Virus record (IMG/VR): IMGVR_UViG_3300043449_002710
Span: 62,001 to 126,000 of that record
DNA: 64,000 nt
Strand: one strand, 5' to 3'
The notes beneath the pieces were generated by a model, which made no database searches, was not told the origin of the DNA, and worked only from the letters and a program-made list of their open reading frames with translations. Position numbers and translations under genes: made by a program. Below are positions 31,402-64,000 of this stretch, one piece after another; the stretch's first letter is position 1, and the number at the start of each line of letters is the position of its first letter.

Positions 31402-31560
31402 ATTTAAAAATTAACCCGAAAAGCGACAGATTGTGAATTTGATGCCTTGCGTCGAGTAAATTCACTTGCTTGGGGCGGATTTCTTTCTTACGCTGACTTT
31501 CATAACAGGCCGCACTTAGGCATATCGCCGCATTTAGGCCGCAACAGAAAGGTCGGATTT

Positions 31561-32847
31561 ATGTCGATGTCCATGTCCATGGACGATAGTGGTGAACTGC
31601 GCAAACAGAAGTTCGGAGAACGCGAACCGCGCTGGGATGAAAAAATCAAGTGGTACGAGATCCCAGATGATGCCACGCCACACGCTTATCGCTTAATCGC
31701 TCGCCCCGTTTACTACGCTCAGCACTGGATTCAAACCCGCAAGCAAGATGGCACGAATGGAAAACCATTTGCTGCTCTCTGCAAGAATTACGACTCCGAG
31801 AACAGCAAGTTCTTCGACAACGGCTGTAAGATTTGTGAGTTTGTTGATACGGCTTACAAGTCGATGCGTGAGGCGGAAAAGAATAAGCCTCCGAAGAAAG
31901 ACGAGAGCGGAAAAATCATTCCACCGAGGCTCCCTGACAACATCAGCCGTCTTCGTAGACGTGTGACCATGGCTCACAACTGCATTGTTCGCGAAGACCA
32001 AGAACAGGGTCCTCCCTCGAATAACGCGACTAACTGGTCTTTTGTCCATGCAATCAGGCTCCCTCAAGGTGTGGCTGACTCTGTCGTGGATCTGCAAGTC
32101 AAATTCGGGGCTCCCAATCCGGCTGGAGGCAAGTATGGTTTTAGCCACAAGGATTTCGGAAAAGATATCTACCTGAGCTACAACTCCCAGGCCGGAACCC
32201 CAACAGCTATGTATAGTGTGGTTGTGGGTCCAAAAGATCCGCCCACTCCTTTGACTGCTGATGAGTTGAAACACGGCCCGCATCTGGTCAATTTCTTGGA
32301 GCATCTGAACGGCAAGTACCCCAAGGATGAAACCCTTGAGGAAGCCTTGCGTAGAAATGGCTATTACGATTGGCTTGAAAAGATGAATGCTGCAGCCAAT
32401 CTGAGTCAGATTGAAAGGGTTTCTCCACCTGTTCAGGTTACTGCTCAACCCCAAGCGCACAGTGCTTTTGATGACGGTGGTGGAATGACTCATTCGTCTG
32501 GGGTAGCTCCAGCTCCCGCTAAGATGGGAAATTTCCAAGCTCCGCCCGAAGAAGATGACGTTCCGATGGATTTCCCACCGGTACAACAAGCTAAACCCGC
32601 CCCTCAAAAAGCTGCTGCTTCGGCACCAGCTTCCAACGGAAGCGATATCCAAACCAAACTTCAGGCTTTTGCAAACGAAACGGGTAAGGCCTTAACGGCT
32701 TTCGAGAAGGATTTATCCGATGTCAGTTTGAAATTTTATAAACCTGGATTGAACGTTCCTGCGTGCTTTACTCAATACTCAGCGAACGACAAAGCGGTTT
32801 GTAAAAAATGCCCAATCCGTCTGGATTGCATGATGACGGATAACTAA
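31561..32847 (+). CDS. single-stranded DNA-binding protein, T4 gp32-like
   Basis: Y..QHWI...G.PF...C.NY....CKICE pattern, KDFGKDI.L, low-complexity Pro/Ala linker; located upstream of recA. Confidence 0.65.
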   Translation: MSMSMSMDDSGELRKQKFGEREPRWDEKIKWYEIPDDATPHAYRLIARPVYYAQHWIQTRKQDGTNGKPFAALCKNYDSENSKFFDNGCKICEFVDTAYKSMREAEKNKPPKKDESGKIIPPRLPDNISRLRRRVTMAHNCIVREDQEQGPPSNNATNWSFVHAIRLPQGVADSVVDLQVKFGAPNPAGGKYGFSHKDFGKDIYLSYNSQAGTPTAMYSVVVGPKDPPTPLTADELKHGPHLVNFLEHLNGKYPKDETLEEALRRNGYYDWLEKMNAAANLSQIERVSPPVQVTAQPQAHSAFDDGGGMTHSSGVAPAPAKMGNFQAPPEEDDVPMDFPPVQQAKPAPQKAAASAPASNGSDIQTKLQAFANETGKALTAFEKDLSDVSLKFYKPGLNVPACFTQYSANDKAVCKKCPIRLDCMMTDN

Positions 32848-33170: not shown

Positions 33171-35549
33171 ATGGCAAAAACTAAGAAAGAAAAGGCTGAG
33201 TCTGCTCGCGAAGAGCGGTCTAAGGCCAGGGAAAAGAACGCCTCGAAGGCACAAGCAGATCTGATCAAGGAATACCGCGCTAAGATGCAAGCCTCGATCA
33301 ATCAGATCACCAAGAAACTCGATTGCAAGGCAATGGGTTTTGAACCACCCCAAGGAACCAATGGCGCGGTGAGCACAGGGGTTCTTTGCGTGGATCTGAT
33401 CACGGGTGGGGGGTTCCCTAAGCACCGTATGTCCACGGTGGCTGGAGACTCAGGCGCAGGCAAATCCACTTTAGTAGGCAAATCCGAAGGTACGGCTCTT
33501 CAGACGGGATTGATCTGCCATCATCTCGATCTCGAAGGCGCGGCTGACTATACCTGGATGCTCAAAAACGGAACTGACATGAATCTGTATTTGGGTAAAA
33601 GAGGCCAACCCAAGACTCTTTATTACATCCCAGATCTTCCATCTGGAGATGCTTCTTTCAGGTATATGTCTCGCGTCTTGGATGAAGCGATTGCAAACGG
33701 GGCTGAAGACCTCCCGTTTCTTTCAAATATCTTTTATCAAGACTCGATCCCGGCTTGTATCCCAGAGTCCATGCTTGAGAACGATGAAAAGGGCAATTCC
33801 CCCGACCTTGCGGTATTGACCTCTCGCGAAATTCCTCGCGTTAGAATGAAGCTGAAAAAAGCCAACGCAGCCTATGTTGCGATCAATCAAATCCGCGAGA
33901 ATCCCCGTGCGATGTTTGGTTGTTTGCATGGAGATACTCGAATTCGATTCGTAGATGGGCGAGTCCTTAAAATTAGGGATATTGTAAATCAAAAAATTGA
34001 AGGGGATATTTGGAGTTTCGATGAAAAATCTCAAACTCTAGTGCCTAAGAAAATTTTGAATTGGTTCAATAATGGCTATAGCTCTAGAGAACATTGGGTT
34101 TCGATTCGAACAGAATCTTTAGGTTCTCAACGTGGACATTATGACATTACGGTTACCCGTAACCATAAAATGCTTACCCCTTCTGGGGAATGGGTAGAAG
34201 CAGCTAGTCTCAAAGTAGGCGATAATTTGGTTAGCCAATACGAGGATCGAATTAACGGTACGTTGAGATCCTTTTTACTAGGTATGGCTGTAGGGGATTC
34301 GTCTCTGCACGAAAAATATAATCGTGGAGCCCTCACCCTTTGTAATAGGGAGCAACCTGAATACTTAGAATGGAAAGTAGACAAGTTAACCAAAGCGGGT
34401 ATTGAGTTCAAACAATACGGGGATCATGTTTTTATCTCTAAGCCACGCGCCGACTTTGAAATTTTAAGGCGGGAAACAACCAGAAGAAACCCGCTCAAGG
34501 TCTTGGATCAAATGACACCGCTGAGTATGGCTCTCTGGTTTATGGATGATGGATGTTATCATGGGAATACCCCGTTTTATAAAAATGAAAAACCTTATTT
34601 CAAACATGATGGATTCCTTTCTTTTAAACGCCTGAGAGAAGATCCGACCACTTTGGCTGGGATTGAAAAGTTTTTTAACCAAATGGGTTACTCAGGTTCA
34701 CTTTCTTCAGAGGGGGGATATCTTTTCAGTGCCGAAGGTTTTAGGAAACTCAGTCAGGATATCAGTCCGTTTGTTCCGCCTTGCATGTCTTATAAGCTCC
34801 TTCCAGAGCATAGGAATAATTACCAGGACTTTGACCTTTCTTTTGATGTGAAACAAAAAGTAGTCCCGGTAAAAATTCTTTGGGTTCGAGAGATTTCCGA
34901 CAAGAAGTCAAAAAGCTTGGGGAAATTCGATTTAGAGATTGAAGGAACCCATAATTATGTCGCTTGTAGTCAATACGGCGGTGTGGTTGTTCACAACTCG
35001 CCAATCTATGAGCCCGGGGGAAACGCACCTACTTTCTATGCGGATTTGAAGCTTTGGCTCACTCGAACCGGAAAAGCGAAAGCTTTGGACTTCAAAGGCG
35101 AGCACAAGATCACGCCCAAGGATTCCAAACTCTTTAAAGCCATGGGGGTTTCGATCGAGCAAAACCCAGATGGCACGGAAGACCGCTACTTCTACACTCA
35201 CGTCAAGACCGTCAAAAACCGAGTCTTCCCACCTTTGAAGGAAACTTACTTCAGAATGTGGATTGAAGAAAACGGTGGGGTGGGTCGCGGCATCGATCCG
35301 GTCTGGGATGTGATTCGTTTCTTTGAAGAGATCGGAATGTTGACTTTCGAGAGTATGAAAGAAGTTGTGCTCAAAGGTCAGATCTATGATTACTATGATC
35401 TGAAAAAAGAGATCCTCTCCAAGCCCGATCTTTATGAAGAAGCACGTTCACTTCTGGATTCAGGCAAAGCCTTCGATCTTTACTTCAACCGCTTGAGAGG
35501 CGGTGGTTTGGAAGTCGGTAACCCAGACCAAGAAGACGACGAAGAATAA
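33171..35549 (+). CDS. recA: RecA/UvsX-like recombinase, intein-containing
   Basis: STG...VDL..GGG.P, Walker A GDSGAGKST, Walker B-like FYQDSI, INQIREN..AMFG|SPIYEPGGNA..FYA. Confidence 0.92.
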   Translation: MAKTKKEKAESAREERSKAREKNASKAQADLIKEYRAKMQASINQITKKLDCKAMGFEPPQGTNGAVSTGVLCVDLITGGGFPKHRMSTVAGDSGAGKSTLVGKSEGTALQTGLICHHLDLEGAADYTWMLKNGTDMNLYLGKRGQPKTLYYIPDLPSGDASFRYMSRVLDEAIANGAEDLPFLSNIFYQDSIPACIPESMLENDEKGNSPDLAVLTSREIPRVRMKLKKANAAYVAINQIRENPRAMFGCLHGDTRIRFVDGRVLKIRDIVNQKIEGDIWSFDEKSQTLVPKKILNWFNNGYSSREHWVSIRTESLGSQRGHYDITVTRNHKMLTPSGEWVEAASLKVGDNLVSQYEDRINGTLRSFLLGMAVGDSSLHEKYNRGALTLCNREQPEYLEWKVDKLTKAGIEFKQYGDHVFISKPRADFEILRRETTRRNPLKVLDQMTPLSMALWFMDDGCYHGNTPFYKNEKPYFKHDGFLSFKRLREDPTTLAGIEKFFNQMGYSGSLSSEGGYLFSAEGFRKLSQDISPFVPPCMSYKLLPEHRNNYQDFDLSFDVKQKVVPVKILWVREISDKKSKSLGKFDLEIEGTHNYVACSQYGGVVVHNSPIYEPGGNAPTFYADLKLWLTRTGKAKALDFKGEHKITPKDSKLFKAMGVSIEQNPDGTEDRYFYTHVKTVKNRVFPPLKETYFRMWIEENGGVGRGIDPVWDVIRFFEEIGMLTFESMKEVVLKGQIYDYYDLKKEILSKPDLYEEARSLLDSGKAFDLYFNRLRGGGLEVGNPDQEDDEE
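33921..34997 (+). mobile_element. intein with LAGLIDADG homing endonuclease, 359 aa
   Basis: Starts C(LHGDTRI), ends VVHN followed by Ser; block B VTRNHKMLT; endonuclease blocks LLGMAVGDS and ALWFMDDG. Confidence 0.93.
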
Positions 35550-39207: not shown

Positions 39208-39293
39208 GGAGAGATACCCAAGCGGCCAAAGGGACCAGACTGTAAATCTGGCGGCGTATGCCTTCGAAGGTTCGAATCCTTCTCTCTCCACCA
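39208..39293 (+). tRNA. trnY: tRNA-Tyr (GTA)
   Basis: GGAGAGA/TCTCTCC acceptor, CCAGA-CTGTAAA-TCTGG anticodon arm, long variable arm, GGTTCGAATCC, encoded CCA. Confidence 0.97.
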
Positions 39294-39343: not shown

Positions 39344-39419
39344 TCAGGGATAGCTCAGTTGGTAGAGCAACCGGCTGTTAACCGGTTGGTCGGGGGTTCG
39401 AATCCCTCTCCCTGAGCCA
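39344..39419 (+). tRNA. trnN: tRNA-Asn (GTT)
   Basis: TCAGGGA/TCCCTGA acceptor, ACCGG-CTGTTAA-CCGGT anticodon arm, GGTTCGAATCC, encoded CCA. Confidence 0.97.
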
Positions 39420-45854: not shown

Positions 45855-47519
45855 GTGGGGATGAGGCATAACCAAAAATACACAACTGAACAGATCAATA
45901 CCTTGATCTTAGCTCGGGGTTATTTGGTTGACCCGGAATTTGTGTGGTTGGGAGCTAACAAAAGCGATATTTCTTTTTTTTGTCCCCGCCATGGCAAGAG
46001 GACTACACATTGGTCCAATTTCCGAAAAGGAAAAAGTTGTAAGTTGTGCGCTAGCGAGCAACAAGCTCAGAAAAAAATCAGTAAAATCGATTGGCCTACC
46101 CGGGTTAACGAACTTTTAAATGAAAGAAATTTTAGCCTGCTAGAAAGACCTGAAACACTTTATTCTTTCGCTAAAATAAAAGTACGCTGTAATGTGGATC
46201 AGCACGAGTGGTGGACTTGCTACAACCACCTAAAAGCGCACAAAAAAGGTTGTTTGGTTTGCGCGGGTTTATTGAAAACTTCTTTTACCGAGGTTAAAAA
46301 GAAACTGCAGGAAGAAGAGTTTAAAGTTACTGGGGATCTTCTTCCTATTACTTTCAACAGCCAAACTCCAATAGAAGTGATTTGTCCCCAAGGGCACGCT
46401 ACAACCACCAATGCAAACAAAGTGCAGCGAGGTTATGGCTGCAAATATTGCGCTGAAAAAGCACTCACCCAAGAAGAGGTCATACAACGCCTTAAAACAC
46501 GTGGGTTCACAAGCACGGATTCGTACAAAGGAGTGCATACTCCAATGCACTTAGTTTGCGAAAATGGGCACGATGTTTTTAAGTCCTACATGGCGATATG
46601 GCATGATGAAACTCAGTGCTCCTCTTGTCGTCCCCCTTATTCATCTAAGCCGGAAGAAGAAATTTCCTCTTGGCTGAAGACTCTCCTCCCAGAAAACGAT
46701 ATTTTAAGAAGCGATCGGATTCTTTTGGATGGGAATGAAGTGGACATTTACATTCCTTCCAAAAAGCTGGGGATTGAATTCAATGGTCTTTATTTTCATA
46801 CAGAAATTGCCTTGATGCGATCGGGGCGCACACTTCTGGAAGCTCAAGCTTACCATCAGAGTAAAACGGTTCGTGCGGCCCAAAAAGGGGTTCAGCTCAT
46901 CACCCTATGGGATTTCGAATGGGAGATGCGGCAGCAGGCTGTGAAAACAAGATTGAAATCTCTGTTGGGCCTAAATTCATTTAGAGTGGGTGCAAGAAAG
47001 ACCACACTCAGGTCTTTGAATAAAAATGAGTGGAGAACAGTTCGGGATTTCCTAAACACTTACCACATTCAAGGCTCAGCTTCTTTTAAGTATGCTTACG
47101 GGCTTTTTTTAAAAGACGAGTTGGTCAGCGTCATGACTTTTCAAAATCACCACAGACAAAACGTGGATAGAGGCACTTTGGTTTTGAATCGTTATTGTGT
47201 GAAAGAAGACTTTTCTATTAGTGGAGGAGCTACAAAACTCTTTCAATATGCACACAAAGAACTGTCATGCCCCATCTTGAGTTATTCTGACAATCGTTGG
47301 TCCACGGGTGATGTGTATGAAAAATTGGGATTTACTGCCATCAAAAGATCCAGGCCTGATTATTTTTACTCTTTTAGGGGGAAGGGACCTTTTTCGAAGC
47401 AGTCATTAAAGAAAACGCCCGAAGAAAGAAAGTCTGATAAAACAGAACGGGATTTGCGATTGGAACAGGATTACCAGCGGGTTTGGGACTGCGGAAAGAT
47501 CACTTGGCTTTATAAATAA
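45855..47519 (+). CDS. putative free-standing homing endonuclease (Hef-like): Zn-ribbon repeats + PD-(D/E)XK + GNAT-like domain
   Basis: Four C..GH...C..C repeats; S.PE.EI, EVDIYIPSKKLGIEFNGLYFH; C-terminal YSDNRWS.G.VY..LGF..PDY...DCG. Confidence 0.75.
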   Translation: MGMRHNQKYTTEQINTLILARGYLVDPEFVWLGANKSDISFFCPRHGKRTTHWSNFRKGKSCKLCASEQQAQKKISKIDWPTRVNELLNERNFSLLERPETLYSFAKIKVRCNVDQHEWWTCYNHLKAHKKGCLVCAGLLKTSFTEVKKKLQEEEFKVTGDLLPITFNSQTPIEVICPQGHATTTNANKVQRGYGCKYCAEKALTQEEVIQRLKTRGFTSTDSYKGVHTPMHLVCENGHDVFKSYMAIWHDETQCSSCRPPYSSKPEEEISSWLKTLLPENDILRSDRILLDGNEVDIYIPSKKLGIEFNGLYFHTEIALMRSGRTLLEAQAYHQSKTVRAAQKGVQLITLWDFEWEMRQQAVKTRLKSLLGLNSFRVGARKTTLRSLNKNEWRTVRDFLNTYHIQGSASFKYAYGLFLKDELVSVMTFQNHHRQNVDRGTLVLNRYCVKEDFSISGGATKLFQYAHKELSCPILSYSDNRWSTGDVYEKLGFTAIKRSRPDYFYSFRGKGPFSKQSLKKTPEERKSDKTERDLRLEQDYQRVWDCGKITWLYK

Positions 47520-53819: not shown

Positions 53820-55583
53820 ATGTTATTTGAAGATGCTTTAAGAGTTGCAAAAACTGCTGGATTGAAAGTTCTAGAAACTGGGCTTGTCAATTCTGCAAAA
53901 AGACAACTGATCGATGTTGTCTGTAAGGCTGGGCACTCACGTAGAATGCCTCGCAATAAATTCAGCAACAGACCCCCTCAAAATTGTCCTGTTTGTTTAA
54001 AAGAACAAGGCCCTGATCTGGATAAAATTCTAACTGATCCTAAAATCAAAACTAGGTTAGATGAGGGGTATCATCTCAAAAAAGCTTTTTCCGAAGATCA
54101 TGAAATCCAGTTAGAAGTTGTCTGCCCACAAGGTCACACCTATTCTATTGCTAAATGGAAATTTACTAAAGGGACTCAATGCGGCTCTTGCTCAGGTAAG
54201 AATCGGGACCTTACTTTTTTTAACATCAAGCAAGAAATGGAAGCCGAGGGTTTTGAAGTTTTATCGAAGGAATATCAAAATCAGTATCAAAAGCTCCATC
54301 TGATTGACCCTGACGGTAACGAACAATGGATCTCGGCAGATTCTTGGAAACGCGGTTATAGGTCAGAGCGAGGACCGACTCAGCAGACTAGAGACCGCAC
54401 AATCGAAGAAGTAAAAAAAGATTTTGAAGCCGAAGGCTATCAGCTTTTGGAAACCAAATTTATCAATGTTAAAACTAAAATGAGAGCAGTATGCCCTAAA
54501 GGGCATGAGTTTCGAGTGCATTGGAATCATTGGAAAGATGCTGGCGTTAGGTGCTCGGTTTGTTTTGGCACCCCTATGATGACTTTAAAAGAAATTCAAG
54601 AGCATCCAGAAACTATCCAATCTGGTTACCAAGCCTTACGCCGAGAGCGGATTGGTGCTCGTTTGGGTTGCGTTTTTTTATGTCCAAAAGGTCATGAATG
54701 GACTTCCACTCTCCCAGATTTTTTTTCAAAAAAATACCGATGTTCCTCTTGTAACCCGAAGTCTAGCTTGGCGGAATTGGAATTCCTAGAAGAAGTGAAG
54801 AAAACATATCCATCGGCAAGAAAAAGTTTGGATTTCGGTTTTGAAATCGACATCTACATTCCCGAGTTAAAATTAGGAATTGAGTATTGTGGTCTTTATT
54901 GGCATTGCGAAAAAGAAAAACAACCTAATGCACATAAGGACAAGTTTTTAAAAGCTCAAAAAAATGGAATCAAGCTGTTGACCATTTTTGAAGACGAGTG
55001 GTTTTATAAAAAAGAAATTGTCTTGCGAAGAATCTTGAGATCCAAAAAGATCTCGGCTCGCGAAACTCAATTCAAAGAGATATCTAAAGTGGAGGCAGAT
55101 AAATTTTTTGAGGAGAATCATCTTCAAGGAAAATCAGCTACTACAACAAAACAGCATTTTGGTCTTTTTTATCTAGGGTCTTTAGTTGGTGCTATTGCGT
55201 ATGGACCCCACCATAGAAAGGATACGGGAGAATGGGTGCTAAGCCGACTTTGTTTTGGAGAATTTGATATTGTCGGGGGTACGGAAAAGTTATTCAAAAA
55301 CAGTCTGCGTTATTTACCTAAAGTCAAACTAATCTCATGGTCCGACAACAGGTATTCTAACGGGTCAGTCTATGCGAGACTAGGTTTTATCAAAGAGGAG
55401 GATTTAGGTCCCGATTACTCTTATGTGAAACCTGGGCATTCCCCAATTCGGGTTTCCAAGCAATCCATGAAAAAAACCAAAGAAGAGCAAGCATCAGGGA
55501 AAACCGAGCACGAACTCCGATTAGCGCAGGATTGGTACAGGATCTACGACTGCGGCAAAATCCGGTGGGCTTACCCACGCTGA
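53820..55583 (+). CDS. putative free-standing homing endonuclease (Hef-like), paralogue of 45855..47519
   Basis: Four intact and one degenerate CP.GH...C..C repeats; SLAE.E, FEIDIYIPELKLGIEYCGLYWH; SWSDNRYS.GSVY..LGF..PDY...YDCG. Confidence 0.75.
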   Translation: MLFEDALRVAKTAGLKVLETGLVNSAKRQLIDVVCKAGHSRRMPRNKFSNRPPQNCPVCLKEQGPDLDKILTDPKIKTRLDEGYHLKKAFSEDHEIQLEVVCPQGHTYSIAKWKFTKGTQCGSCSGKNRDLTFFNIKQEMEAEGFEVLSKEYQNQYQKLHLIDPDGNEQWISADSWKRGYRSERGPTQQTRDRTIEEVKKDFEAEGYQLLETKFINVKTKMRAVCPKGHEFRVHWNHWKDAGVRCSVCFGTPMMTLKEIQEHPETIQSGYQALRRERIGARLGCVFLCPKGHEWTSTLPDFFSKKYRCSSCNPKSSLAELEFLEEVKKTYPSARKSLDFGFEIDIYIPELKLGIEYCGLYWHCEKEKQPNAHKDKFLKAQKNGIKLLTIFEDEWFYKKEIVLRRILRSKKISARETQFKEISKVEADKFFEENHLQGKSATTTKQHFGLFYLGSLVGAIAYGPHHRKDTGEWVLSRLCFGEFDIVGGTEKLFKNSLRYLPKVKLISWSDNRYSNGSVYARLGFIKEEDLGPDYSYVKPGHSPIRVSKQSMKKTKEEQASGKTEHELRLAQDWYRIYDCGKIRWAYPR

Positions 55584-56202: not shown

Positions 56203-57264
56203 ATGTCCAAAATTCAAAACGAAGACATTAAAAGCGTGGCCGAGCTTACTCTTCAAGGGTTGACCGAATCGAGTCTGCCGCACGATGATAAAGTCTTTTT
56301 GACAGCCAATTCACTCAACAAAACTTTATACCAAGCCATCGTGGATGGTGACCTATCGGGGGCAGCGAGCGGAGAGATGAGAAAAGCGCAATACTTTACG
56401 TCGAGCGGAAATTTCACGGTCCCTTCCAATGTCTACGTGGTCTATGTCACGGCCTGGGGCGGCGGGGGTGGTGGGGGCGGGGGCGGAACCTATTCCACGA
56501 ACTCGGGCGGTGGGGGCACGGGTGGAGGCGGGGGCTATTTTATCTATGACCGTTCGGTTTCAGTTACCCCAGCCGAAGTAATTGCAGTCACTATCGGGGG
56601 CGGCGGGGCCGGGGGTTCTTCTAGTGCAGATGGTTCCTCAGGCGGAAATACCTTGTTTGGTTCTTATTTGACGGTTCGAGGGGGCGGTAGCGGTTCCGCA
56701 GGGTCTAATGGAAACGTGAGTAATGCCGCAGGCGGGAGTTTTGTAAAACTCGGAATCACCGCAGGCGGAGGTGGTGGAAGTGGCTACACTGGCCCAGGGG
56801 GTGCGTCTTTAGGAAATTTGGGGGGAACTTCTGTCAACGGCTATGCAGGTTTTGGCGTGGACGGTGGTAGTGGATTGGGCGGCAAACAAGGCCCTGGGGG
56901 CCTTGGGGGTATCTCCTATTCGAGCACGACTAGGAAAGGTTCTGGCGGGGGCGGGGGTGCATCCGGTAGTGGGGGCGGTGCAGGGGGAAGCCTAGAGATC
57001 AATGAAATCGGAATCTGTGGGATCGGCGGGACGGGCGGAACCGGCGGCAATCTAGCCAACGCTTACTGTGGCGGGGGCGGGGGCGGCGGGGCCGGATTCA
57101 ATGGGGATGGCGCAAACGGAGGCTCCTCTGCCGCAGGGAGTTCAGCCTTAAGCAACAGCGGCGCAGGCGGAGGCGGTGGAGCGGGCGGGATCTCCACGAG
57201 TGTGAATGGATATTCAGGGGGCGCAGGCGGATCTGGCGGGTTGATTGTCTATTGGTTTGAGTAA
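56203..57264 (+). CDS. glycine-rich domain virion/fibre-like protein
   Basis: FTSSGNFTVP..V..VYVTAWGGGGGGGGG ... GGAGGSGGLIVY, the phage glycine-rich domain. Confidence 0.75.
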   Translation: MSKIQNEDIKSVAELTLQGLTESSLPHDDKVFLTANSLNKTLYQAIVDGDLSGAASGEMRKAQYFTSSGNFTVPSNVYVVYVTAWGGGGGGGGGGTYSTNSGGGGTGGGGGYFIYDRSVSVTPAEVIAVTIGGGGAGGSSSADGSSGGNTLFGSYLTVRGGGSGSAGSNGNVSNAAGGSFVKLGITAGGGGGSGYTGPGGASLGNLGGTSVNGYAGFGVDGGSGLGGKQGPGGLGGISYSSTTRKGSGGGGGASGSGGGAGGSLEINEIGICGIGGTGGTGGNLANAYCGGGGGGGAGFNGDGANGGSSAAGSSALSNSGAGGGGGAGGISTSVNGYSGGAGGSGGLIVYWFE

Positions 57265-59260: not shown

Positions 59261-60181
59261 TTGATAATGAAGAAATGTCGGTTTCCTGATTGCCCTGCCA
59301 CCAAACTTCAGCGTTTTGGCCTATGCAATAAACATCGGAAATGGGTTGAAAAAGGTTATTACTCGGAAGACCTTCGGCTTTTAAAACCCATGACGAGGAC
59401 GAGTACCCCCACGGTTTGCAAAATCAAGGACTGCAAAAACCCCCACGCCTCTCTCGGGTTTTGCGTGAAACATTACCGCAGATTTAAAGATGGGATTCTC
59501 GATGCAAACGGTGATCAGCTTAGGGAATTCAAACGCCCGATCAAATACCCCAAAGACATGGAATGCTTTTTGTGTGGGAAAAAAGGAAAGATCGTCAAAG
59601 GGTTTTGCCGGTTCCATTACCCTCAGTATTTAAAAGGCATCATCGACTACGATGGGGTGACATTAAGAAAATTAAAACGAGTGCAACGATACGAAAGTTG
59701 GCAGACGTGTAAAGCCAAAGGGTGCCGGAAAAAACCCAGAGCCAAAGGCTGGTGCAATTCCCATAAAGCTTCTTTTGACCGTGGGCTCTATAATCTCAAG
59801 GGCGAGAGGCTGGCTCCCTCGTTTGCTAAAAACAAAGACAGGCCTTGCTCTACTCCTCAATGTGGCCAGCCCGCTCACTGTAAAGGGCTATGCAGGCTTC
59901 ACTACAATCGGCAACGCACAGGCTATCTCGGGCCTGCTGGGTTTAAAAACGTGGGCCACCCCTGTAGTGAAACAGGGTGCTCAAAAGAAGCCTATTGTCG
60001 AACCCTTTGCGTGCAGCACTATTTCAAATGGAAGAGAAAGAATTCCCCTAAAACCAAGGCAAATCCTTCCGGTCAGATTTCTTCAGGTACTCTAGAAAAC
60101 TCGATTGCTTCTGATCTCGAACAGAAAGAATCGGGTTTTGAATCGGCCACTCGATCCGAAGCTCTGGGTCATTCCACATGA
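59261..60181 (+). CDS. six-repeat CCCH zinc-finger protein
   Basis: Six C-x(2-4)-C-x(8-10)-C-x2-H units; highly basic. Confidence 0.75.
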   Translation: MIMKKCRFPDCPATKLQRFGLCNKHRKWVEKGYYSEDLRLLKPMTRTSTPTVCKIKDCKNPHASLGFCVKHYRRFKDGILDANGDQLREFKRPIKYPKDMECFLCGKKGKIVKGFCRFHYPQYLKGIIDYDGVTLRKLKRVQRYESWQTCKAKGCRKKPRAKGWCNSHKASFDRGLYNLKGERLAPSFAKNKDRPCSTPQCGQPAHCKGLCRLHYNRQRTGYLGPAGFKNVGHPCSETGCSKEAYCRTLCVQHYFKWKRKNSPKTKANPSGQISSGTLENSIASDLEQKESGFESATRSEALGHST

Positions 60182-60614
60182 TCCCGCCCTCGGTTTTGGG
60201 ATTATAGAGCTGATCGACTTTGTAAAGGACATCGGCAGGCTCATCACCTAAGACGCAAAAGCCATGAGCAAAGCCTGCTGGAATCCAAAGAAGCTTACCA
60301 TTCATGTCGCTCAATTCCACGCCAACATGCTTTCCAAAAGTGGGACTATCGACGCGGATATCCACCGCGACATCCCAGATCCTGCCTCGGATAACGCCCA
60401 CAAGCTTTCCTTGCGCGGGTTGTTCTTGGTAGTGAAGCCCTCGGAGGATGCCTGGGGCCGAGCGGGAATGATTGTCTTGGGCGAAAAGGGCGGGAAGCCC
60501 TGCCTCCAAAAACTTTTCCTTTTGGAAGCGCTCCACAAAAAAACCTCGCTCATCGCCGTGGAGGTTCAACTCGACCAATTTCAGTCCTTCTAGTCTAAGA
60601 GAGGTGACTTTCAT
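60048..60614 (-). CDS. rmlC: dTDP-4-dehydrorhamnose 3,5-epimerase
   Basis: D.RGFF.E, QDNHSRS..G.LRGLHYQ, DVAVD.R..SPTFG, LWIP.GFAHGF. Confidence 0.96.
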   Translation of the reverse strand: MKVTSLRLEGLKLVELNLHGDERGFFVERFQKEKFLEAGLPALFAQDNHSRSAPGILRGLHYQEQPAQGKLVGVIRGRIWDVAVDIRVDSPTFGKHVGVELSDMNGKLLWIPAGFAHGFCVLGDEPADVLYKVDQLYNPKTEGGIMWNDPELRIEWPIQNPILSVRDQKQSSFLEYLKKSDRKDLPWF

Positions 60615-61464
60615 ATTCTTCCCAGCAATCGTCTAAGCCTCGTTTCCAAGGCGGAAGTTTAACTCCTAAAGTCTTAAAAACCTTTTCCGTGTTCAATTTA
60701 GAATTCTTGGGCCGTTGAGCGCGAGTCGGAAACTCGGCACTTTTAATCGGTCGAACCTTTAAGGGGATTTTTGCTCGGTGAAAAATGGCTTGGGCAAACT
60801 CATACCAAGATGTCTCCCCCGAATTACACAGATGATAAACCCCACTAGGAAACTCGGGAAGATCAAGCGCTCGATCCAAAGCTCTCAAAGTCGCTGCAGC
60901 TAAATGCGGAGCATAAGTTGGGGCACCGACTTGGTCAAAGACAATTGAGATCTCAGACATCTTTTCGCCAAGTCTCAGCATGGTTCGAAAGAAATTTTTT
61001 CCGTAAGCATCATAGACCCAAGAAGTCCGAAAGATGAGGCTCTTAGGAGCCCGCTGAAGAACCGAGGCTTCGCCTAGAAGCTTGGCAGCCCCGTAGGCAT
61101 TGATGGGCTTCGGTATATCGTCTTCGCGCCAAGGCAGAAAACCTGTGCCCGGGAAAACATAGTCTGTCGAGTAATGGATCAAGGGGATCTCTCGCTTGGC
61201 GCACCAATCGGCTAAAATCCCTGGCGCGTAGGCGTTCACCGCGAGATTGATTGAATTGTCCTGCTCCGCTTGATCGACTTGAGTGTAAGCCGCCGCATTG
61301 ATGATCGCTTTAGGCGGCTCTGGGCAAAGCCGAGTTAAATCTGCCTCCAAATGATCGAATAAACGAAAGTCGAGCTGCTGAGAATTAAACCCAACGCCTT
61401 CTGACCCCAGAAGATGGAGCAAAGCTCTTCCCACTTGGCCTGAGGCTCCAAGCACCGCAATCAC
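60595..61464 (-). CDS. rmlD: dTDP-4-dehydrorhamnose reductase
   Basis: [47 protein letters not shown]. Confidence 0.96.
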
Positions 61465-62339
61465 AGCACACGTCCTTCCTTGAGCACTTGCTCCAAATAA
61501 GTCCCGTAGGAAGTCTTACTATGGCGATCGGCATGAGCTTGAAGTTGATCCTCGGAGATGAATCCGTTTCGGTAGGCGATCTCTTCGAGACAGGCGATCT
61601 TCAAGCCTTGTCTTTTTTCAACCGTCTGCACAAAAAGTGAAGCGTCTAAGAGTGAGTCATAGGTTCCGCTATCGAGCCACGCCACCCCACGCCCCATTTT
61701 ATTGACCCTCAAGGCCCCTTGCCCTAAGTAGATTCGATTGATGTCGGTGATCTCCAATTCCCCGCGAGCCGAAGGCTTTAAGTTTTTCGCGATCTCCACT
61801 ACCTGCGAGTCATAGAAGTAAAGCCCGGTGACAGCCCAATTCGACTTGGGAAATTTTGGCTTTTCCTCGATACTCAAGGCTCTGCCTGTTCGGTCAAACT
61901 CGACCACCCCATAACGCTCAGGGTCGCTGACATGGTAGGCATAGATTTCAGCACCAGACTGAAGTTGGGTGGACAGTTGAAGATTTTTTCCCAACTGCTC
62001 AGAGTGAAAGATGTTGTCGCCTAAGATCAAACAGACTGGGGAATCTTGTAAGAACTCAGCCCCAAGCACAAAAGCCTGGGCGATCCCCTCAGGCCTAGGC
62101 TGTTCGACATACGAAAGCTCAACCCCAAAATCCGAACCATCCCCTAAGAGGGTTTGGATGCGGGGCAGGTCTTGAGGTGAGCTGATCACTAGGATCTCTC
62201 GGATGTCTGCAAGCATCAGAGTTGAAAGTGGGTAATAAATGGCGGGCTTGTCATAGACGGGCAAAAGCTGTTTGTTCACCGCTTTGGTGAGCGGGTAAAG
62301 CCTTGTCCCACTTCCTCCAGCCAAAACAATCCCTTTCAT
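61461..62339 (-). CDS. rmlA: glucose-1-phosphate thymidylyltransferase
   Basis: [58 protein letters not shown]; ATG 62339 overlaps the rmlB stop. Confidence 0.97.
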
Positions 62340-63352
62340 TTGGATCTCCTCATCGTCACTGCCTGACACCAAGCCTCGTTTTCGAGATACCACTGCACGG
62401 TGTCTTTCAACCCCGCTTCAAAATTCGAATACTTGCGCTTAAAACCTAATTCTCGCTCCGCCAAAGAGTCGTCAATCGCATAGCGGTGGTCATGACCTAG
62501 CCTGTCTGTCACGAATTTGATCGCGCTTTCATGCGGTTTCCCATCGGAGCGCGGGTGCATTTGATCGAGTTCTTGGCAAATCGTTTTGACGACCTCTCTA
62601 TTGTTTCTTTCGGATCTTCCGCCAAAACAATAAGTGGCCCCAGGTCTTCCTTTTTCCAAAGCCAAGGAAATGCCTCGGCAGTGATCCTCGACATGAATCC
62701 AGTCTCGAATATTCCCACCGTCTCCATAAAGAGGGAGGTATTTGTCGGAAAGAGCGCAAGTGATCATGTAGGGAATGAGCTTCTCTGGGAATTGTCTTGG
62801 TCCATAATTGTTTGAGCAGTTGGTGATGATTGTAGGCAGTCTATAAGTATGATGCCAAGCGCGGACCAACATATCACCTGAAGCTTTGGAAGCCGAGTAA
62901 GGAGAGTTAGGCAGGTATGGGCTTTCTTCTGTGAAAAATCCTGTTGAGCCTAAAGAACCGTAAACCTCATCGGTTGAGACTTGGAGAAACTTGAAGTCTT
63001 TTTTCCTGCCTTCGGTATTCCAATATTCCAAAGAAGCCTGCAAGAGAGTGAAGACGCCTTGGATATTGGTTTCGATGAAAGCAGACGGATGATCAATGGA
63101 GCGATCGACATGGGATTCTGCAGCGAAGTTCACCACCGCATCCACAGAATATCGATTCAAGATCCCGCTCACCAAAAAAGAATCACAGATGTTCCCTGTG
63201 ACAAAGTCTAGCTCCAAGCCCTCTAGGTTTTCTCTGTGTCCCGCGTAGGTCAGAGCATCGAGCACGACGATCTGATCGCCTTGCTCTAGTCTTTGACGAA
63301 CAAAGGTGCTTCCAATAAACCCAGCCGCCCCAGTCACAAGAAGAGTCGCCAT
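62336..63352 (-). CDS. rmlB: dTDP-glucose 4,6-dehydratase
   Basis: [60 protein letters not shown]. Confidence 0.97.
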
Positions 63353-63378
63353 GACTAGGGTTTTACTAGAATCGCTAC

Positions 63379-63750
63379 TTATTTTTTATCGGCTGCATCC
63401 ATTTGGCGGCAGATCTTCTTGGCCCAAGACCAACCCGCATTTCCGCCCCAGAGAAGCCAAGCCACGTACCCCGCAGTCGTGTCATCGCCTTTGTATTTTA
63501 AATCGTCGGATTGATGGCGATCGAAGTAAGCTTTCATCCTACGCACAGTCGAAGGGGACAGAACCTTCCGATTGGAAAGATCCCTAGCTCTAGCGACACC
63601 CACTTCGGTCCCACCGCGATTGAGTTTCTTTCTTAACTCCAGCCCTCTTTTGGCATTGGAAGCCATCTGCTCAGTAGGTTTGAAGTTAATATGCTTATAT
63701 TTTTCAGGCGAAGAAGCTAATATTTTTTCTAGTGTGGGGTATTTAGACAT
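63379..63750 (-). CDS. conserved phage protein (RGLELR...GGT.VG.ARA...WGG.AG domain)
   Basis: NA.RGLELR....GGT.VGVARARDL...LS..TV.RM..YF.RH...AW.LWGG..G..W, a domain I recognise from phage genomes; function unknown. Confidence 0.7.
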   Translation of the reverse strand: MSKYPTLEKILASSPEKYKHINFKPTEQMASNAKRGLELRKKLNRGGTEVGVARARDLSNRKVLSPSTVRRMKAYFDRHQSDDLKYKGDDTTAGYVAWLLWGGNAGWSWAKKICRQMDAADKK

Positions 63751-63765
63751 AAACTAACAATAAGC

Positions 63766-64000
63766 TTATTGTTTTTTCACCCCGTAGAAATATAAATCCC
63801 TAGGATAAGAATTCACGAAAAAAGCAAACTCACTGAAAATGGCGTCCACGTGCAAGACTTGGCGAATATCTTTTTCGGTCAAATTCTTATAGTAATCAAA
63901 CCAATCGCCATGCGCCGCCAAGAGCGGGGCAGAGTTAGGATCTGTCCTGCGCGTGCCGTGTTCTGGCCTGCCTTCAGTTGCGCAGGTGAAAAGAAACAAC
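63766..64000 (-). CDS. C-terminal part of a probable class I SAM-dependent methyltransferase (5' end outside window)
   Basis: FTCAT.GRPEHGT.RT.P..AP.....DYY.NLTE.D...DLYF.G.K matches the C-terminus of a methyltransferase family I recall from glycan-related loci. Confidence 0.55.
   Translation of the reverse strand, partial: LFLFTCATEGRPEHGTRRTDPNSAPLLAAHGDWFDYYKNLTEKDIRQVLHVDAIFSEFAFFVNSYPRDLYFYGVKKQ

What the first reader, a model, noticed from the sequence alone, without database searches (positions are those of the whole stretch)
60048..64000. Complete dTDP-L-rhamnose operon (rmlBADC) plus methyltransferase embedded among phage genes
Seen: four intact, translationally coupled genes (ATGA and GTGA overlaps) with all catalytic motifs. 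They are flanked on both sides by phage-type ORFs (CCCH finger gene, conserved phage domain at 63379) and lie near a partial SAM methyltransferase. Established: RmlA-B-C-D make dTDP-L-rhamnose. Inference: the phage makes its own activated sugar, possibly O-methylated, for a phage-encoded glycosylation system. Targets could be virion or fibre glycosylation, rhamnosylated DNA bases (anti-restriction) or host surface conversion. No glycosyltransferase was recognised in the window, so the acceptor is unknown.
Basis: partly seen in the sequence, partly recalled or inferred. Interest (0 to 1): 0.85.

Follow-up and report, generated by a model that had tools for sequence, protein, structure and literature searches.

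The report
Rhamnose-sugar operon in a jumbo phage
A 223-kb uncultured phage carries a complete, intact four-gene pathway for the activated sugar dTDP-L-rhamnose, probably captured from a bacterium; it is real, but similar pathways are already known in cultured phages, so it is a new example and not a new kind of thing.

Summary
Window 60048-63352 (minus strand) carries rmlB-rmlA-rmlD-rmlC. All four genes are intact, overlap at their junctions, and score above NCBIfam's equivalog cut-offs. They sit in one same-strand gene run with a 123-aa phage protein and a 181-aa SAM methyltransferase that the window end cuts.

The window is bases 62001-126000 of a 223,260-bp IMG/VR viral contig. I walked nearly the whole contig and found phage genes throughout and no bacterial O-antigen locus. 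The region is base-identical in a second assembly.

There are six, including two adjacent GT2+TPR enzymes about 51 kb away. Their modelled fold is closest to the peptide and protein glycosyltransferases SunS, ThuS and GmaR.

RmlB groups with Bdellovibrionota-type bacterial operons that share the B-A-D-C order. It does not group with other phage rml genes.

My best reading is that the phage makes its own dTDP-L-rhamnose for phage-encoded glycosylation, most likely of proteins. Host-envelope remodelling is the main rival. DNA glycosylation lacks support.

Novelty is modest. Complete dTDP-rhamnose pathways are already annotated in over 100 cultured E. coli phages and have been discussed in print.

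The parts
62336..63352 (-). rmlB, dTDP-glucose 4,6-dehydratase, 338 aa
   Evidence: TIGR01181 at 436.9 bits against a cut-off of 365.1. GAAGFIG, TDE and YSASK motifs are visible.
61461..62339 (-). rmlA, glucose-1-phosphate thymidylyltransferase, 292 aa; its ATG overlaps the rmlB stop (ATGA)
   Evidence: TIGR01207 at 473.4 bits against 360.65. GGSGTRL motif present. A GAGGAG Shine-Dalgarno-like sequence lies 7 nt upstream.
60595..61464 (-). rmlD, dTDP-4-dehydrorhamnose reductase, 289 aa; its GTG overlaps the rmlA stop (GTGA)
   Evidence: TIGR01214 at 287.4 bits against 224.05, aligned from residue 2. The GTG start keeps the GASGQVG nucleotide-binding motif. The shorter JGI gene call (279 aa) would cut that motif.
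60048..60614 (-). rmlC, dTDP-4-dehydrorhamnose 3,5-epimerase, 188 aa; overlaps rmlD by 20 nt
   Evidence: TIGR01221 at 226.4 bits against 155.75.
63379..63750 (-). 123-aa protein directly upstream of rmlB on the same strand. It is a stand-alone copy of a domain that other phages fuse to the prohead protease or the portal protein.
   Evidence: phrog_2859 at E 2.2e-12. At least 598 IMG/VR matches. Nine of ten sampled proteins carrying the domain also carry Peptidase_S78 (7), CLP_protease (1) or Phage_portal_2 (1).
63766..64000 (-). 3' end (77 codons) of a 181-aa class I SAM methyltransferase. The gene runs to window-equivalent position 64311, beyond the window.
   Evidence: The full gene is L002:9440-9985. 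PF13489 at 43.3 bits, PF08241 at 31.6 bits. Substrate unknown.
59261..60181 (+). Convergent neighbour, not part of the pathway: a 306-aa protein with six C..C..C..H zinc-finger-like repeats. Its 3' end overlaps rmlC by 134 nt.
   Evidence: Translation. No Pfam or NCBIfam family. Called as a 304-aa gene in the Logan assembly but not in the JGI gene calls.

Best explanation
A bacterial-type rmlBADC cassette was captured by a 223-kb tailed phage and kept intact.

Proposed mechanism:
- During infection the four enzymes convert host glucose-1-phosphate and dTTP into dTDP-L-rhamnose. This follows the established RmlA, RmlB, RmlC, RmlD chemistry.
- The phage thereby has its own supply of this sugar donor, independent of the host.
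- The donor feeds phage-encoded glycosyltransferases found elsewhere in the genome. These are two adjacent GT2+TPR enzymes, three further GT2/GT-A-like proteins and one GT9-like protein.
- Because the GT2+TPR enzymes most resemble protein and peptide glycosyltransferases, the most likely acceptors are proteins. Candidates are phage structural or fibre proteins, such as the collagen-like, glycine-rich and YadA-stalk-like proteins on the contig.
- The co-oriented methyltransferase possibly caps the glycan.

Shown here: the genes, their integrity, the phage context, the glycosyltransferase inventory, the fold resemblance and the bacterial-type ancestry.

Inferred: that the enzymes are active, that any of these transferases uses dTDP-rhamnose, what the acceptor is, and what the methyltransferase does.
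For: - Rml identity and integrity.
- Phage context: the contig is IMGVR_UViG_3300043449_002710, 223,260 bp. It carries Baseplate_J, a virion structural PHROG and a UvsX-like recombinase with an intein, and an Amidase_2 lysin.
- Replication genes: DNA polymerase A, helicases, DnaB, clamp loader, ligase and S-AdoMet lyase. I saw no bacterial housekeeping or LPS locus in about 222 kb.
- The region is identical over 20,372 bp in a Logan assembly.
- Glycosyltransferases by Pfam:
  - GT2+TPR, 353 aa: PF00535 at 31.6 bits.
  - GT2+TPR, 367 aa: 24.5 bits.
  - GT2, 191 aa: 57.4 bits.
  - GT2, 259 aa: 26.3 bits.
  - DUF5672 protein, 459 aa: 83 bits.
  - GT9, 308 aa: 30.7 bits.
- Sequence profile of the GT2+TPR family against PDB: GmaR at 6.5e-7, ThuS and SunS.
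- AlphaFold model: pLDDT 95.8.
- Best Foldseek PDB matches: SunS and ThuS S-glycosyltransferases across both domains, E about 1e-15, TM 0.64-0.67, and also GmaR.
- The family is large and mostly viral. It is often fused to a SAM methyltransferase or a second transferase domain. This echoes the methyltransferase next to rml.
- Precedent for virion glycosylation by phage transferases: Freeman et al. 2023, as cited in PMC12619734.
Against: - No glycosyltransferase lies within about 50 kb of the operon.
- In the 80 IMG/VR loci best matching the GT2+TPR family, none has rml genes within 10 kb. The family therefore does not generally depend on a phage rhamnose supply, and its donor sugar is unknown.
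- The methyltransferase shows no specific similarity to the methyltransferase domains fused to GT2+TPR homologues.
- GT9 and the heptose-kinase-like gene are LPS-core-type functions and point towards envelope chemistry.
- No expression, enzymatic or glycan data exist. The host is unknown.
Confidence: 0.45

Rival explanations
1. Host-envelope remodelling. The phage boosts or redirects dTDP-rhamnose, and perhaps heptose, so that its transferases alter host LPS, O-antigen, capsule or S-layer glycans during infection. This could block superinfection or stop progeny adsorbing to debris.
For: - Rml genes normally serve O-antigen and cell-wall polysaccharide synthesis.
- The nearest operons sit in Gram-negative chromosomes with TonB and ExbB.
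- The contig also has a GT9 heptosyltransferase-like gene (30.7 bits).
- It also has a kinase matching D-glycero-beta-D-manno-heptose-7-phosphate kinase (TIGR02198 at 302 bits against a cut-off of 345).
- Large cyanophages with many transferases and RmlC are interpreted this way (PMC12801897).
Against: - By Pfam the contig shows no Wzx, Wzy, WaaL, polyprenyl-phosphate transferase or other membrane-assembly gene.
- The best-characterised structural relatives of the GT2+TPR pair act on soluble peptides and proteins.
- I saw no integrase in the walked regions, which fits a virulent lifestyle, and that gives little time for surface conversion.
Confidence: 0.3
2. DNA hypermodification. Rhamnose is transferred to hydroxymethylated bases of phage DNA as an anti-restriction measure.
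For: - This was proposed in print for the rml pathway of phapecoctaviruses (PMC7552041).
- Diverse DNA-glycosylating viral transferases are known (Pyle et al. 2024, as cited in PMC12619734).
- The contig carries other candidate anti-restriction or DNA-modification genes: an S-AdoMet lyase, a PAPS_reduct protein and Mom-like domains.
Against: - No thymidylate-synthase-like dCMP or dUMP hydroxymethylase and no T4-type DNA glucosyltransferase family was reported by Pfam. This covers all ORFs of 200 aa or more in the window, the selected ORFs of about 190 aa or more that I scanned, and the precomputed gene tables of the rest of the contig.
- The GT2+TPR fold points to protein substrates.
Confidence: 0.07
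3. Nucleotide-pool or metabolic manipulation without a dedicated acceptor. Examples are draining or buffering dTTP and Glc-1-P, or simply keeping host rhamnose-dependent processes running after host shut-off.
For: In phapecoctaviruses the rml genes lie in the nucleotide-metabolism region, next to ribonucleotide reductase and glutaredoxin.
Against: - All four steps down to the finished donor sugar are conserved and tightly coupled. A pool effect would need only RmlA.
- Six phage transferases are available as consumers.
Confidence: 0.1
4. Artefact or passenger. The operon is a chimeric assembly of bacterial DNA into a phage contig, or a recent non-functional hitch-hiker.
For: - The operon GC is 49.6% against 46.2% for the window.
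- Neither the IMG/VR scan with RmlA nor the IMG/VR loci fetched around p123 relatives turned up a related phage carrying the operon.
Against: - Both junctions are identical in two assemblies, although these may derive from the same reads.
- The genes are tightly packed with phage genes on one strand.
- The closest cellular RmlB is only 69-70% identical and the closest genome RmlD is at most 51%. This is not fresh bacterial DNA.
- All reading frames are intact.
Confidence: 0.03

Closest known systems
Complete dTDP-L-rhamnose operon of Phapecoctavirus and Justusliebigvirus (phAPEC8- and phi92-like E. coli phages, Stephanstirmvirinae)
   Same: - Four contiguous genes for the whole pathway inside a large virulent myovirus genome. 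An example is vB_EcoM_UP17: dehydratase, rffH, rfbC, rmlD.
- 152 phage records hold an RmlD relative and 168 an RmlC relative.
- The function in the phage is unknown and only speculated on (PMC7552041).
   Different: - Separate origin. Those phage proteins are only 38-45% identical to ours, and UP17 RmlB falls far from ours in the tree.
- The gene order is B-A-C-D there and B-A-D-C here.
- Their operon sits beside ribonucleotide reductase. Ours sits beside a methyltransferase and a head-protein-type domain.
- Our phage is an unrelated 223-kb lineage with no close GenBank relative.
Bacterial rmlBADC operons of Bdellovibrionota-type and 'Rickettsiales'-labelled MAGs
   Same: - Same gene order in L006, L012, L019 and L025.
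- In L006, RmlB is 67%, RmlA 72% and RmlC 68% identical. The overall best RmlB match is 69-70%, in L005.
- RmlB lies in a clade with 99% SH-aLRT support, made of 14 Bdellovibrionota, 9 Pseudomonadota-labelled MAGs and 1 FCPU426, and is sister to a Bacteriovoracaceae MAG.
   Different: - Those loci are cellular, with gyrA, TonB, ExbB and transaldolase.
- They share no other gene with the phage.
- RmlD is only 48-51% identical.
SunS / ThuS glycocin S-glycosyltransferases and GmaR flagellin O-GlcNAc transferase (GT-A domain plus TPR-like helical domain)
   Same: - The phage GT2+TPR protein (353 aa) has the same two-domain build.
- Foldseek E about 1e-15 and TM 0.64-0.67 to 7msn and 7msk.
- Profile hits to GmaR, ThuS and SunS.
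- A conserved DLDE (DxD-type) motif.
   Different: - Sequence identity is only 14-16%.
- The donor sugars of the known enzymes are UDP-hexoses, not dTDP-rhamnose.
- No glycocin or flagellin gene is nearby. Acceptor and donor are untested here.
Large cyanomyoviruses with many cell-wall and sugar genes (S-SCSM2R, S-SCSM1, P-SSM2) and glycosylated mycobacteriophage virions
   Same: - Big phage genomes that combine nucleotide-sugar enzymes, including RmlC, with many transferases (PMC12801897).
- Phage-encoded transferases that glycosylate capsid and tail proteins (Freeman 2023, cited).
   Different: - The cyanophages listed carry partial rhamnose pathways.
- The mycobacteriophages use host sugar donors.
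- Here the whole four-step pathway is phage-borne.

Membership tests
RmlA (glucose-1-phosphate thymidylyltransferase, TIGR01207) | Full-length match above the curated equivalog cut-off; GGxGTRL nucleotide-binding signature | tested here: met
   473.4 bits against 360.65, residues 2-286 on profile 1-285. [11 protein letters not shown] is in the translation.
RmlB (dTDP-glucose 4,6-dehydratase, TIGR01181) | Match above cut-off; GxxGxxG, TDE and YxxxK of the extended SDR family | tested here: met
   436.9 bits against 365.1. [14 protein letters not shown] and YSASK are present.
RmlD (dTDP-4-dehydrorhamnose reductase, TIGR01214) | Match above cut-off; GxxGxxG and YxxxK | tested here: met
   287.4 bits against 224.05. 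GASGQVG and YGAAK are present.
RmlC (dTDP-4-dehydrorhamnose 3,5-epimerase, TIGR01221) | Match above cut-off; cupin with the catalytic His in an RGLH(Y/F)Q context | tested here: met
   226.4 bits against 155.75. RGLHYQ is present.
dTDP-L-rhamnose pathway (functional) | The four enzymes together convert Glc-1-P and dTTP to dTDP-L-rhamnose | not testable with these tools
   Needs an enzyme assay. Sequence evidence only.
Tailed phage genome (Caudoviricetes) | Virion hallmark genes on the same contig | tested here: inconclusive
   - Found: Baseplate_J at 26.4 bits against 21.1, a virion structural PHROG, a Gp5_C trace, and listing as an IMG/VR UViG.
- Not found: terminase, portal or major capsid family by Pfam or PHROGs.
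- The replication, recombination and lysis genes are phage-type.
Stephanstirmvirinae-type phage rml operon (common descent) | Orthology with the phAPEC8/phi92 operon: closest relatives and the same gene order | tested here: not met
   38-45% identity. UP17 RmlB is distant in the tree, while ours nests among bacterial sequences. The order is B-A-C-D there and B-A-D-C here.
SunS/ThuS/GmaR-like protein glycosyltransferases | GT-A catalytic domain with a DxD motif plus a TPR-type substrate-binding domain; whole-chain structural match | tested here: met
   PF00535 and TPR_2; invariant D85, D87, E88; Foldseek results; profile hits.
SunS/ThuS/GmaR-like protein glycosyltransferases | Protein or peptide acceptor and identity of the donor sugar | not testable with these tools
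   Needs biochemistry.
T4-type DNA glycosylation system | A dCMP or dUMP hydroxymethylase together with a DNA glycosyltransferase | tested here: not met
   No thymidylate-synthase-like or T4 glucosyltransferase Pfam family appears among the window ORFs of 200 aa or more, the selected ORFs scanned elsewhere, or the precomputed gene tables of the rest of the contig. Divergent enzymes cannot be excluded.
Sugar O-methyltransferase | Class I SAM-dependent fold | tested here: met
   PF13489 at 43.3 bits, PF08241 at 31.6 bits.
Sugar O-methyltransferase | Specificity for a rhamnosyl hydroxyl | not testable with these tools
   Only weak, non-specific NCBIfam hits to assorted O-methyltransferases. No BLASTP similarity to the methyltransferase domains fused to GT2+TPR homologues.

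The most novel reading that the evidence does not exclude
The large, mostly viral GT2+TPR family, with its SunS/ThuS/GmaR-like fold and frequent fusion to methyltransferase or second transferase domains, is a general phage protein-glycosylation machine. This jumbo phage, possibly infecting a Bdellovibrionota-type host, has made it self-sufficient by adding its own dTDP-L-rhamnose factory and a methyltransferase. It would then decorate its virion or fibre proteins (collagen-like or glycine-rich) with methyl-rhamnose glycans, as Bacillus does with its exosporium collagen-like protein and Mimivirus with its fibrils.
Probability: 0.22. Interest if true: 0.6.

Novelty: new member of a known kind. 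Interest (0 to 1): 0.35.

Why it matters
Nobody has shown what phage-borne rhamnose pathways are for, although more than a hundred cultured phages carry one. This contig gives an independent capture of the same four-step pathway by an unrelated jumbo phage. That convergence argues the pathway is selected in phages and is not accidental cargo.

The contig also places the pathway in a genome with six glycosyltransferases, a heptose-kinase-like gene and a methyltransferase, which gives concrete candidate consumers to test. If the GT2+TPR enzymes prove to rhamnosylate phage proteins, a very large viral protein family would gain a function. That would matter for virion stability, receptor binding and immune recognition of phages.

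Tried and rejected
- **Large window ORFs.** PHROGs and Pfam scans of 20 large ORFs were mostly blank. They identified no terminase, portal or capsid.
- **Close phage relatives.** GenBank phages show only about 63-73% nucleotide identity over short conserved stretches of the rml genes. IMG/VR queried with RmlA returned only the contig itself and one 48% hit. JGI metagenome contigs queried with RmlD gave 53% at best. The 5.8-billion-protein set holds one 76% RmlD on a 1.7-kb contig and nothing else above 57%.
- **Fusion link.** I tested whether the operon's methyltransferase resembles the methyltransferase domains fused to GT2+TPR homologues. BLASTP at E 1e-3 found nothing.
- **Neighbourhood link.** None of the 80 best-matching GT2+TPR loci in IMG/VR has rml genes. 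None of 79 p123 loci has GT2+TPR. p123 is close to GT2+TPR in only 4 of 80 loci, which is too few to build on.
- **Proteins beside the GT2+TPR pair** (321 aa and others): no similarity to the extra domains of fused homologues.
- **The 183-aa protein overlapping the heptose-kinase-like gene:** no Pfam or PDB match, so a fuller heptose pathway could not be shown.
- **Promoter and terminator scan** around the operon: promoter-like sites were no more frequent than in shuffled sequence, terminator-like sites only about 2 sd above it, and none marks an operon boundary.
- **Rejected: bacterial contamination or chimera.** See the artefact rival.
- **Rejected: the best bacterial hits are themselves phage.** They carry gyrA, TonB and ExbB and share no other phage gene.

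Full report
**1. The observation**

Window 60048-63352 holds four minus-strand ORFs: rmlB 62336-63352, rmlA 61461-62339, rmlD 60595-61464 and rmlC 60048-60614. Each scores above NCBIfam's curated equivalog cut-off for exactly that enzyme: 436.9/365.1, 473.4/360.65, 287.4/224.05 and 226.4/155.75 bits.

The junctions, read from the sequence, are ATGA (rmlB/rmlA), GTGA (rmlA/rmlD) and a 20-nt overlap (rmlD/rmlC). rmlA has a GAGGAG and rmlD an AAGGAAGGA upstream of the start.

The expected nucleotide-binding and catalytic motifs are visible in the translations. The GTG start of rmlD is the right one. The profile aligns from residue 2, and the shorter JGI gene call would remove GASGQVG.

**2. Where the window comes from**

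The 123-aa protein upstream of rmlB is encoded on JGI metagenome 3300043449 contig Ga0451725_0000003. That contig is 223,260 bp and is also listed as IMGVR_UViG_3300043449_002710. The window is record 62001-126000.

The same 20,372 bp around the operon are base-for-base identical in a Logan assembly of SRR35180140. This may be the same reads put through another assembler.

I walked the contig in about 10-kb steps until 1-222,417 of 223,260 bp was covered.

- Beyond the window end lie the rest of a 181-aa SAM methyltransferase, small ORFs, a homing-endonuclease-like gene and a Peptidase_C92 protein. Further on come a bpMoxR ATPase, VWA, S-AdoMet lyase, a sigma-70-like protein, Toprim and fibre-like proteins.
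- Before the window lie helicases, an intein-bearing DNA polymerase A, a TnpB-like gene, an SMC-like ATPase and a ligase.
- Inside the window are Baseplate_J, a virion-structural PHROG, a UvsX/RecA with an intein, an Amidase_2 lysin and two tRNAs.

There are caveats. Most large ORFs have no family at all, and no terminase, portal or capsid was recognised. No GenBank phage is close.

**3. The operon's immediate partners**

The methyltransferase, the 123-aa protein and rmlBADC are co-oriented. The gaps are 15 and 26 nt ahead of rmlB, and the rml genes themselves overlap.

The methyltransferase is a generic class I enzyme (PF13489, PF08241) and its substrate is unknown.

The 123-aa protein belongs to a very common phage family, with at least 598 IMG/VR matches. 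In other phages the same domain is usually the N-terminal part of the prohead protease or the C-terminal part of a portal protein. Nine of ten sampled carriers had Peptidase_S78 (7), CLP_protease (1) or Phage_portal_2 (1). It is therefore a stand-alone head-protein-type module. Its link to rhamnose is unproven.

**4. The missing glycosyltransferases**

None is in the window by Pfam. Six are elsewhere on the contig:

| Protein | Record position | Pfam evidence |
|---|---|---|
| GT2+TPR, 353 aa | 176,698-177,759 | PF00535, 31.6 bits |
| GT2+TPR, 367 aa | 177,743-178,846 | PF00535, 24.5 bits |
| GT2, 191 aa | 194,404-194,979 | 57.4 bits |
| GT2, 259 aa | 201,078-201,857 | 26.3 bits |
| DUF5672 protein, 459 aa (adjacent to the 259-aa GT2) | 201,867-203,246 | 83 bits |
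| GT9-like, 308 aa | about 1.2-2.1 kb | 30.7 bits |

A 319-aa PfkB kinase at about 45.7 kb matches heptose-7-phosphate kinase strongly (TIGR02198 at 302 bits, just under the 345 cut-off). A collagen-like protein lies about 3 kb from the GT2+TPR pair.

**5. What the GT2+TPR enzymes resemble**

- The family has 2,033 members at E 1e-3 or better in the protein collection.
- Its Atlas clusters are mostly Uroviricota.
- BFVD shows the fold in many phages and giant viruses.
- Many homologues carry an N-terminal SAM methyltransferase or a PF04488 transferase domain.
- A 46-sequence profile hits GmaR (6.5e-7), ThuS and SunS in the PDB.
- The AlphaFold model (pLDDT 95.8) matches SunS and ThuS over both domains (E about 1e-15, TM 0.64-0.67) and also matches GmaR.

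All three known enzymes glycosylate peptides or proteins. That is the basis for preferring protein acceptors. It is a resemblance and does not demonstrate donor or acceptor.

**6. Origin**

Among one-genome-per-species bacterial genomes, the best RmlB matches are 69% (an FCPU426 MAG), 67% (Bacteriovoracaceae MAGs) and 57-65% (Bdellovibrio and 'Rickettsiales'-labelled MAGs). Four of these loci have the same B-A-D-C order.

In a maximum-likelihood tree of these 80 sequences plus a phapecoctavirus, the phage RmlB sits inside a clade with 99% SH-aLRT support. The clade holds 14 Bdellovibrionota, 9 Pseudomonadota-labelled MAGs and 1 FCPU426. The phage sequence is sister to a Bacteriovoracaceae MAG at 88% support. 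The E. coli phage sequence is far away.

The set was chosen by similarity to the query, so the tree can only place the gene among its nearest relatives.

Two of those loci, checked by Pfam, are plainly cellular, and none of the loci shares another gene with the phage. The operon is therefore an old capture from a Gram-negative, Bdellovibrionota-like lineage. This hints at the host but does not establish it.

**7. Comparison with what is known**

Complete rml operons are annotated in cultured phages. vB_EcoM_UP17 carries dehydratase, rffH, rfbC and rmlD next to ribonucleotide reductase. Among the 50,697 phage records, 152 have an RmlD relative and 168 an RmlC relative, mainly Phapecoctavirus and Justusliebigvirus and some cyanophages.

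Olsen et al. [quoted passage not shown] They call it peculiar and speculate on DNA glycosylation (PMC7552041). I found no experimental resolution in the held library.

Large cyanophages with up to 13 transferases plus RmlC are read as cell-surface modifiers (PMC12801897).

The present case is thus a new, independently acquired member of a known kind. It stands out mainly for its unrelated jumbo-phage background and its glycosylation toolkit.

**8. Mechanism and rivals**

The confidences below refer to the full statements given in the Rival explanations section.

- **Best (0.45):** the phage makes its own dTDP-L-rhamnose for phage-encoded glycosylation, probably of proteins.
- **Host-envelope remodelling (0.30):** favoured by the GT9 and heptose-kinase genes and by what rml genes usually do. 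Weakened by the lack of any lipid-carrier or export gene.
- **Pool manipulation (0.10).**
- **DNA rhamnosylation (0.07):** no hydroxymethylase found.
- **Artefact (0.03).**

That the four enzymes make dTDP-L-rhamnose I rate at about 0.9 on its own.

**9. Verdict**

This is a new member of a known kind, with interest 0.35.

Noticed in passing
window 33171-35549 (+): UvsX/RecA-like recombinase interrupted by an intein carrying a LAGLIDADG endonuclease (PF00154, PF14890, PF03161). The contig's DNA polymerase A (L090:5851-9915) also carries an intein.
   Followed up: partly
window 45855-47519 (+), 53820-55583 (+); L002:5185-6942 (+): Three paralogous 554-587-aa genes matching phrog_559 'HNH endonuclease', with weak Mom, GIY-YIG and HTH hits. 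They look like free-standing homing-endonuclease genes scattered around the rml region.
   Followed up: no
window 63379-63750 (-): The 123-aa protein is a stand-alone copy of a domain that other phages fuse to the N-terminus of the prohead protease (S78 or ClpP type) or the C-terminus of the portal. In 4 of 80 IMG/VR loci a homologue lies next to or near a GT2+TPR gene (L291, L292, L307, L329).
   Followed up: partly
L090:10539-11498 (+) (record about 45.7 kb) and L117:13817-14743 (-) (record about 1.2-2.1 kb): A heptose-7-phosphate-kinase-like PfkB gene (TIGR02198 at 302 bits, below the 345 cut-off) and a GT9 heptosyltransferase-like gene. They hint at a second, heptose-based sugar module. 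No GmhA, GmhB or HldC partner was recognised.
   Followed up: partly
window 56203-57264 (+): A 353-aa protein made largely of glycine runs (PF21722 Gly_rich_2, 39 bits), 3 kb from the operon. Elsewhere the contig has a collagen-like protein (L093:9081-9920), a YadA_stalk-like 804-aa protein and an Lcl_C protein. All are possible fibre proteins and possible glycan acceptors.
   Followed up: no
window 59261-60181 (+): A protein with six C..C..C..H repeats and no known family. Its 3' end overlaps the 3' end of rmlC by 134 nt. The JGI and Logan gene calls disagree on whether it is a gene.
   Followed up: no
window 39208-39293 and 39344-39419 (+): tRNA-Tyr (GTA) and tRNA-Asn (GTT) genes.
   Followed up: no
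L118:8243-9364 (-) and L118:7427-8236 (-) (record about 213-215 kb): A tubulin/FtsZ-family protein (PF00091, 39.6 bits) next to a DnaJ homologue. The contig also has a sigma-70-like protein, a bpMoxR+VWA+DUF6744 trio, an S-AdoMet lyase, a PAPS_reduct protein and a TnpB-like gene.
   Followed up: no
L094:5009-12364 (+) and L094:14608-19545 (+) (record about 16-31 kb): Two giant ORFs. One is 2451 aa with a weak NUDIX hit. The other is 1645 aa with RNase_T and two GNAT acetyltransferase domains.
   Followed up: no
window 31447-32847 (+): Atlas feature search points to gp32-like single-strand DNA-binding proteins (score 0.93, viral clusters), which fits its position just before UvsX. This is a lead only.
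   Followed up: partly
record positions 1-40 (L117 end): The 73.7-kb Logan contig starts 37 bases before the start of the JGI contig. This may mark a real genome end or repeat boundary.
   Followed up: no
protein P0122: The only close relative of the phage RmlD anywhere searched: 76% identity on a 1.7-kb Logan contig. It may belong to a related phage.
   Followed up: no
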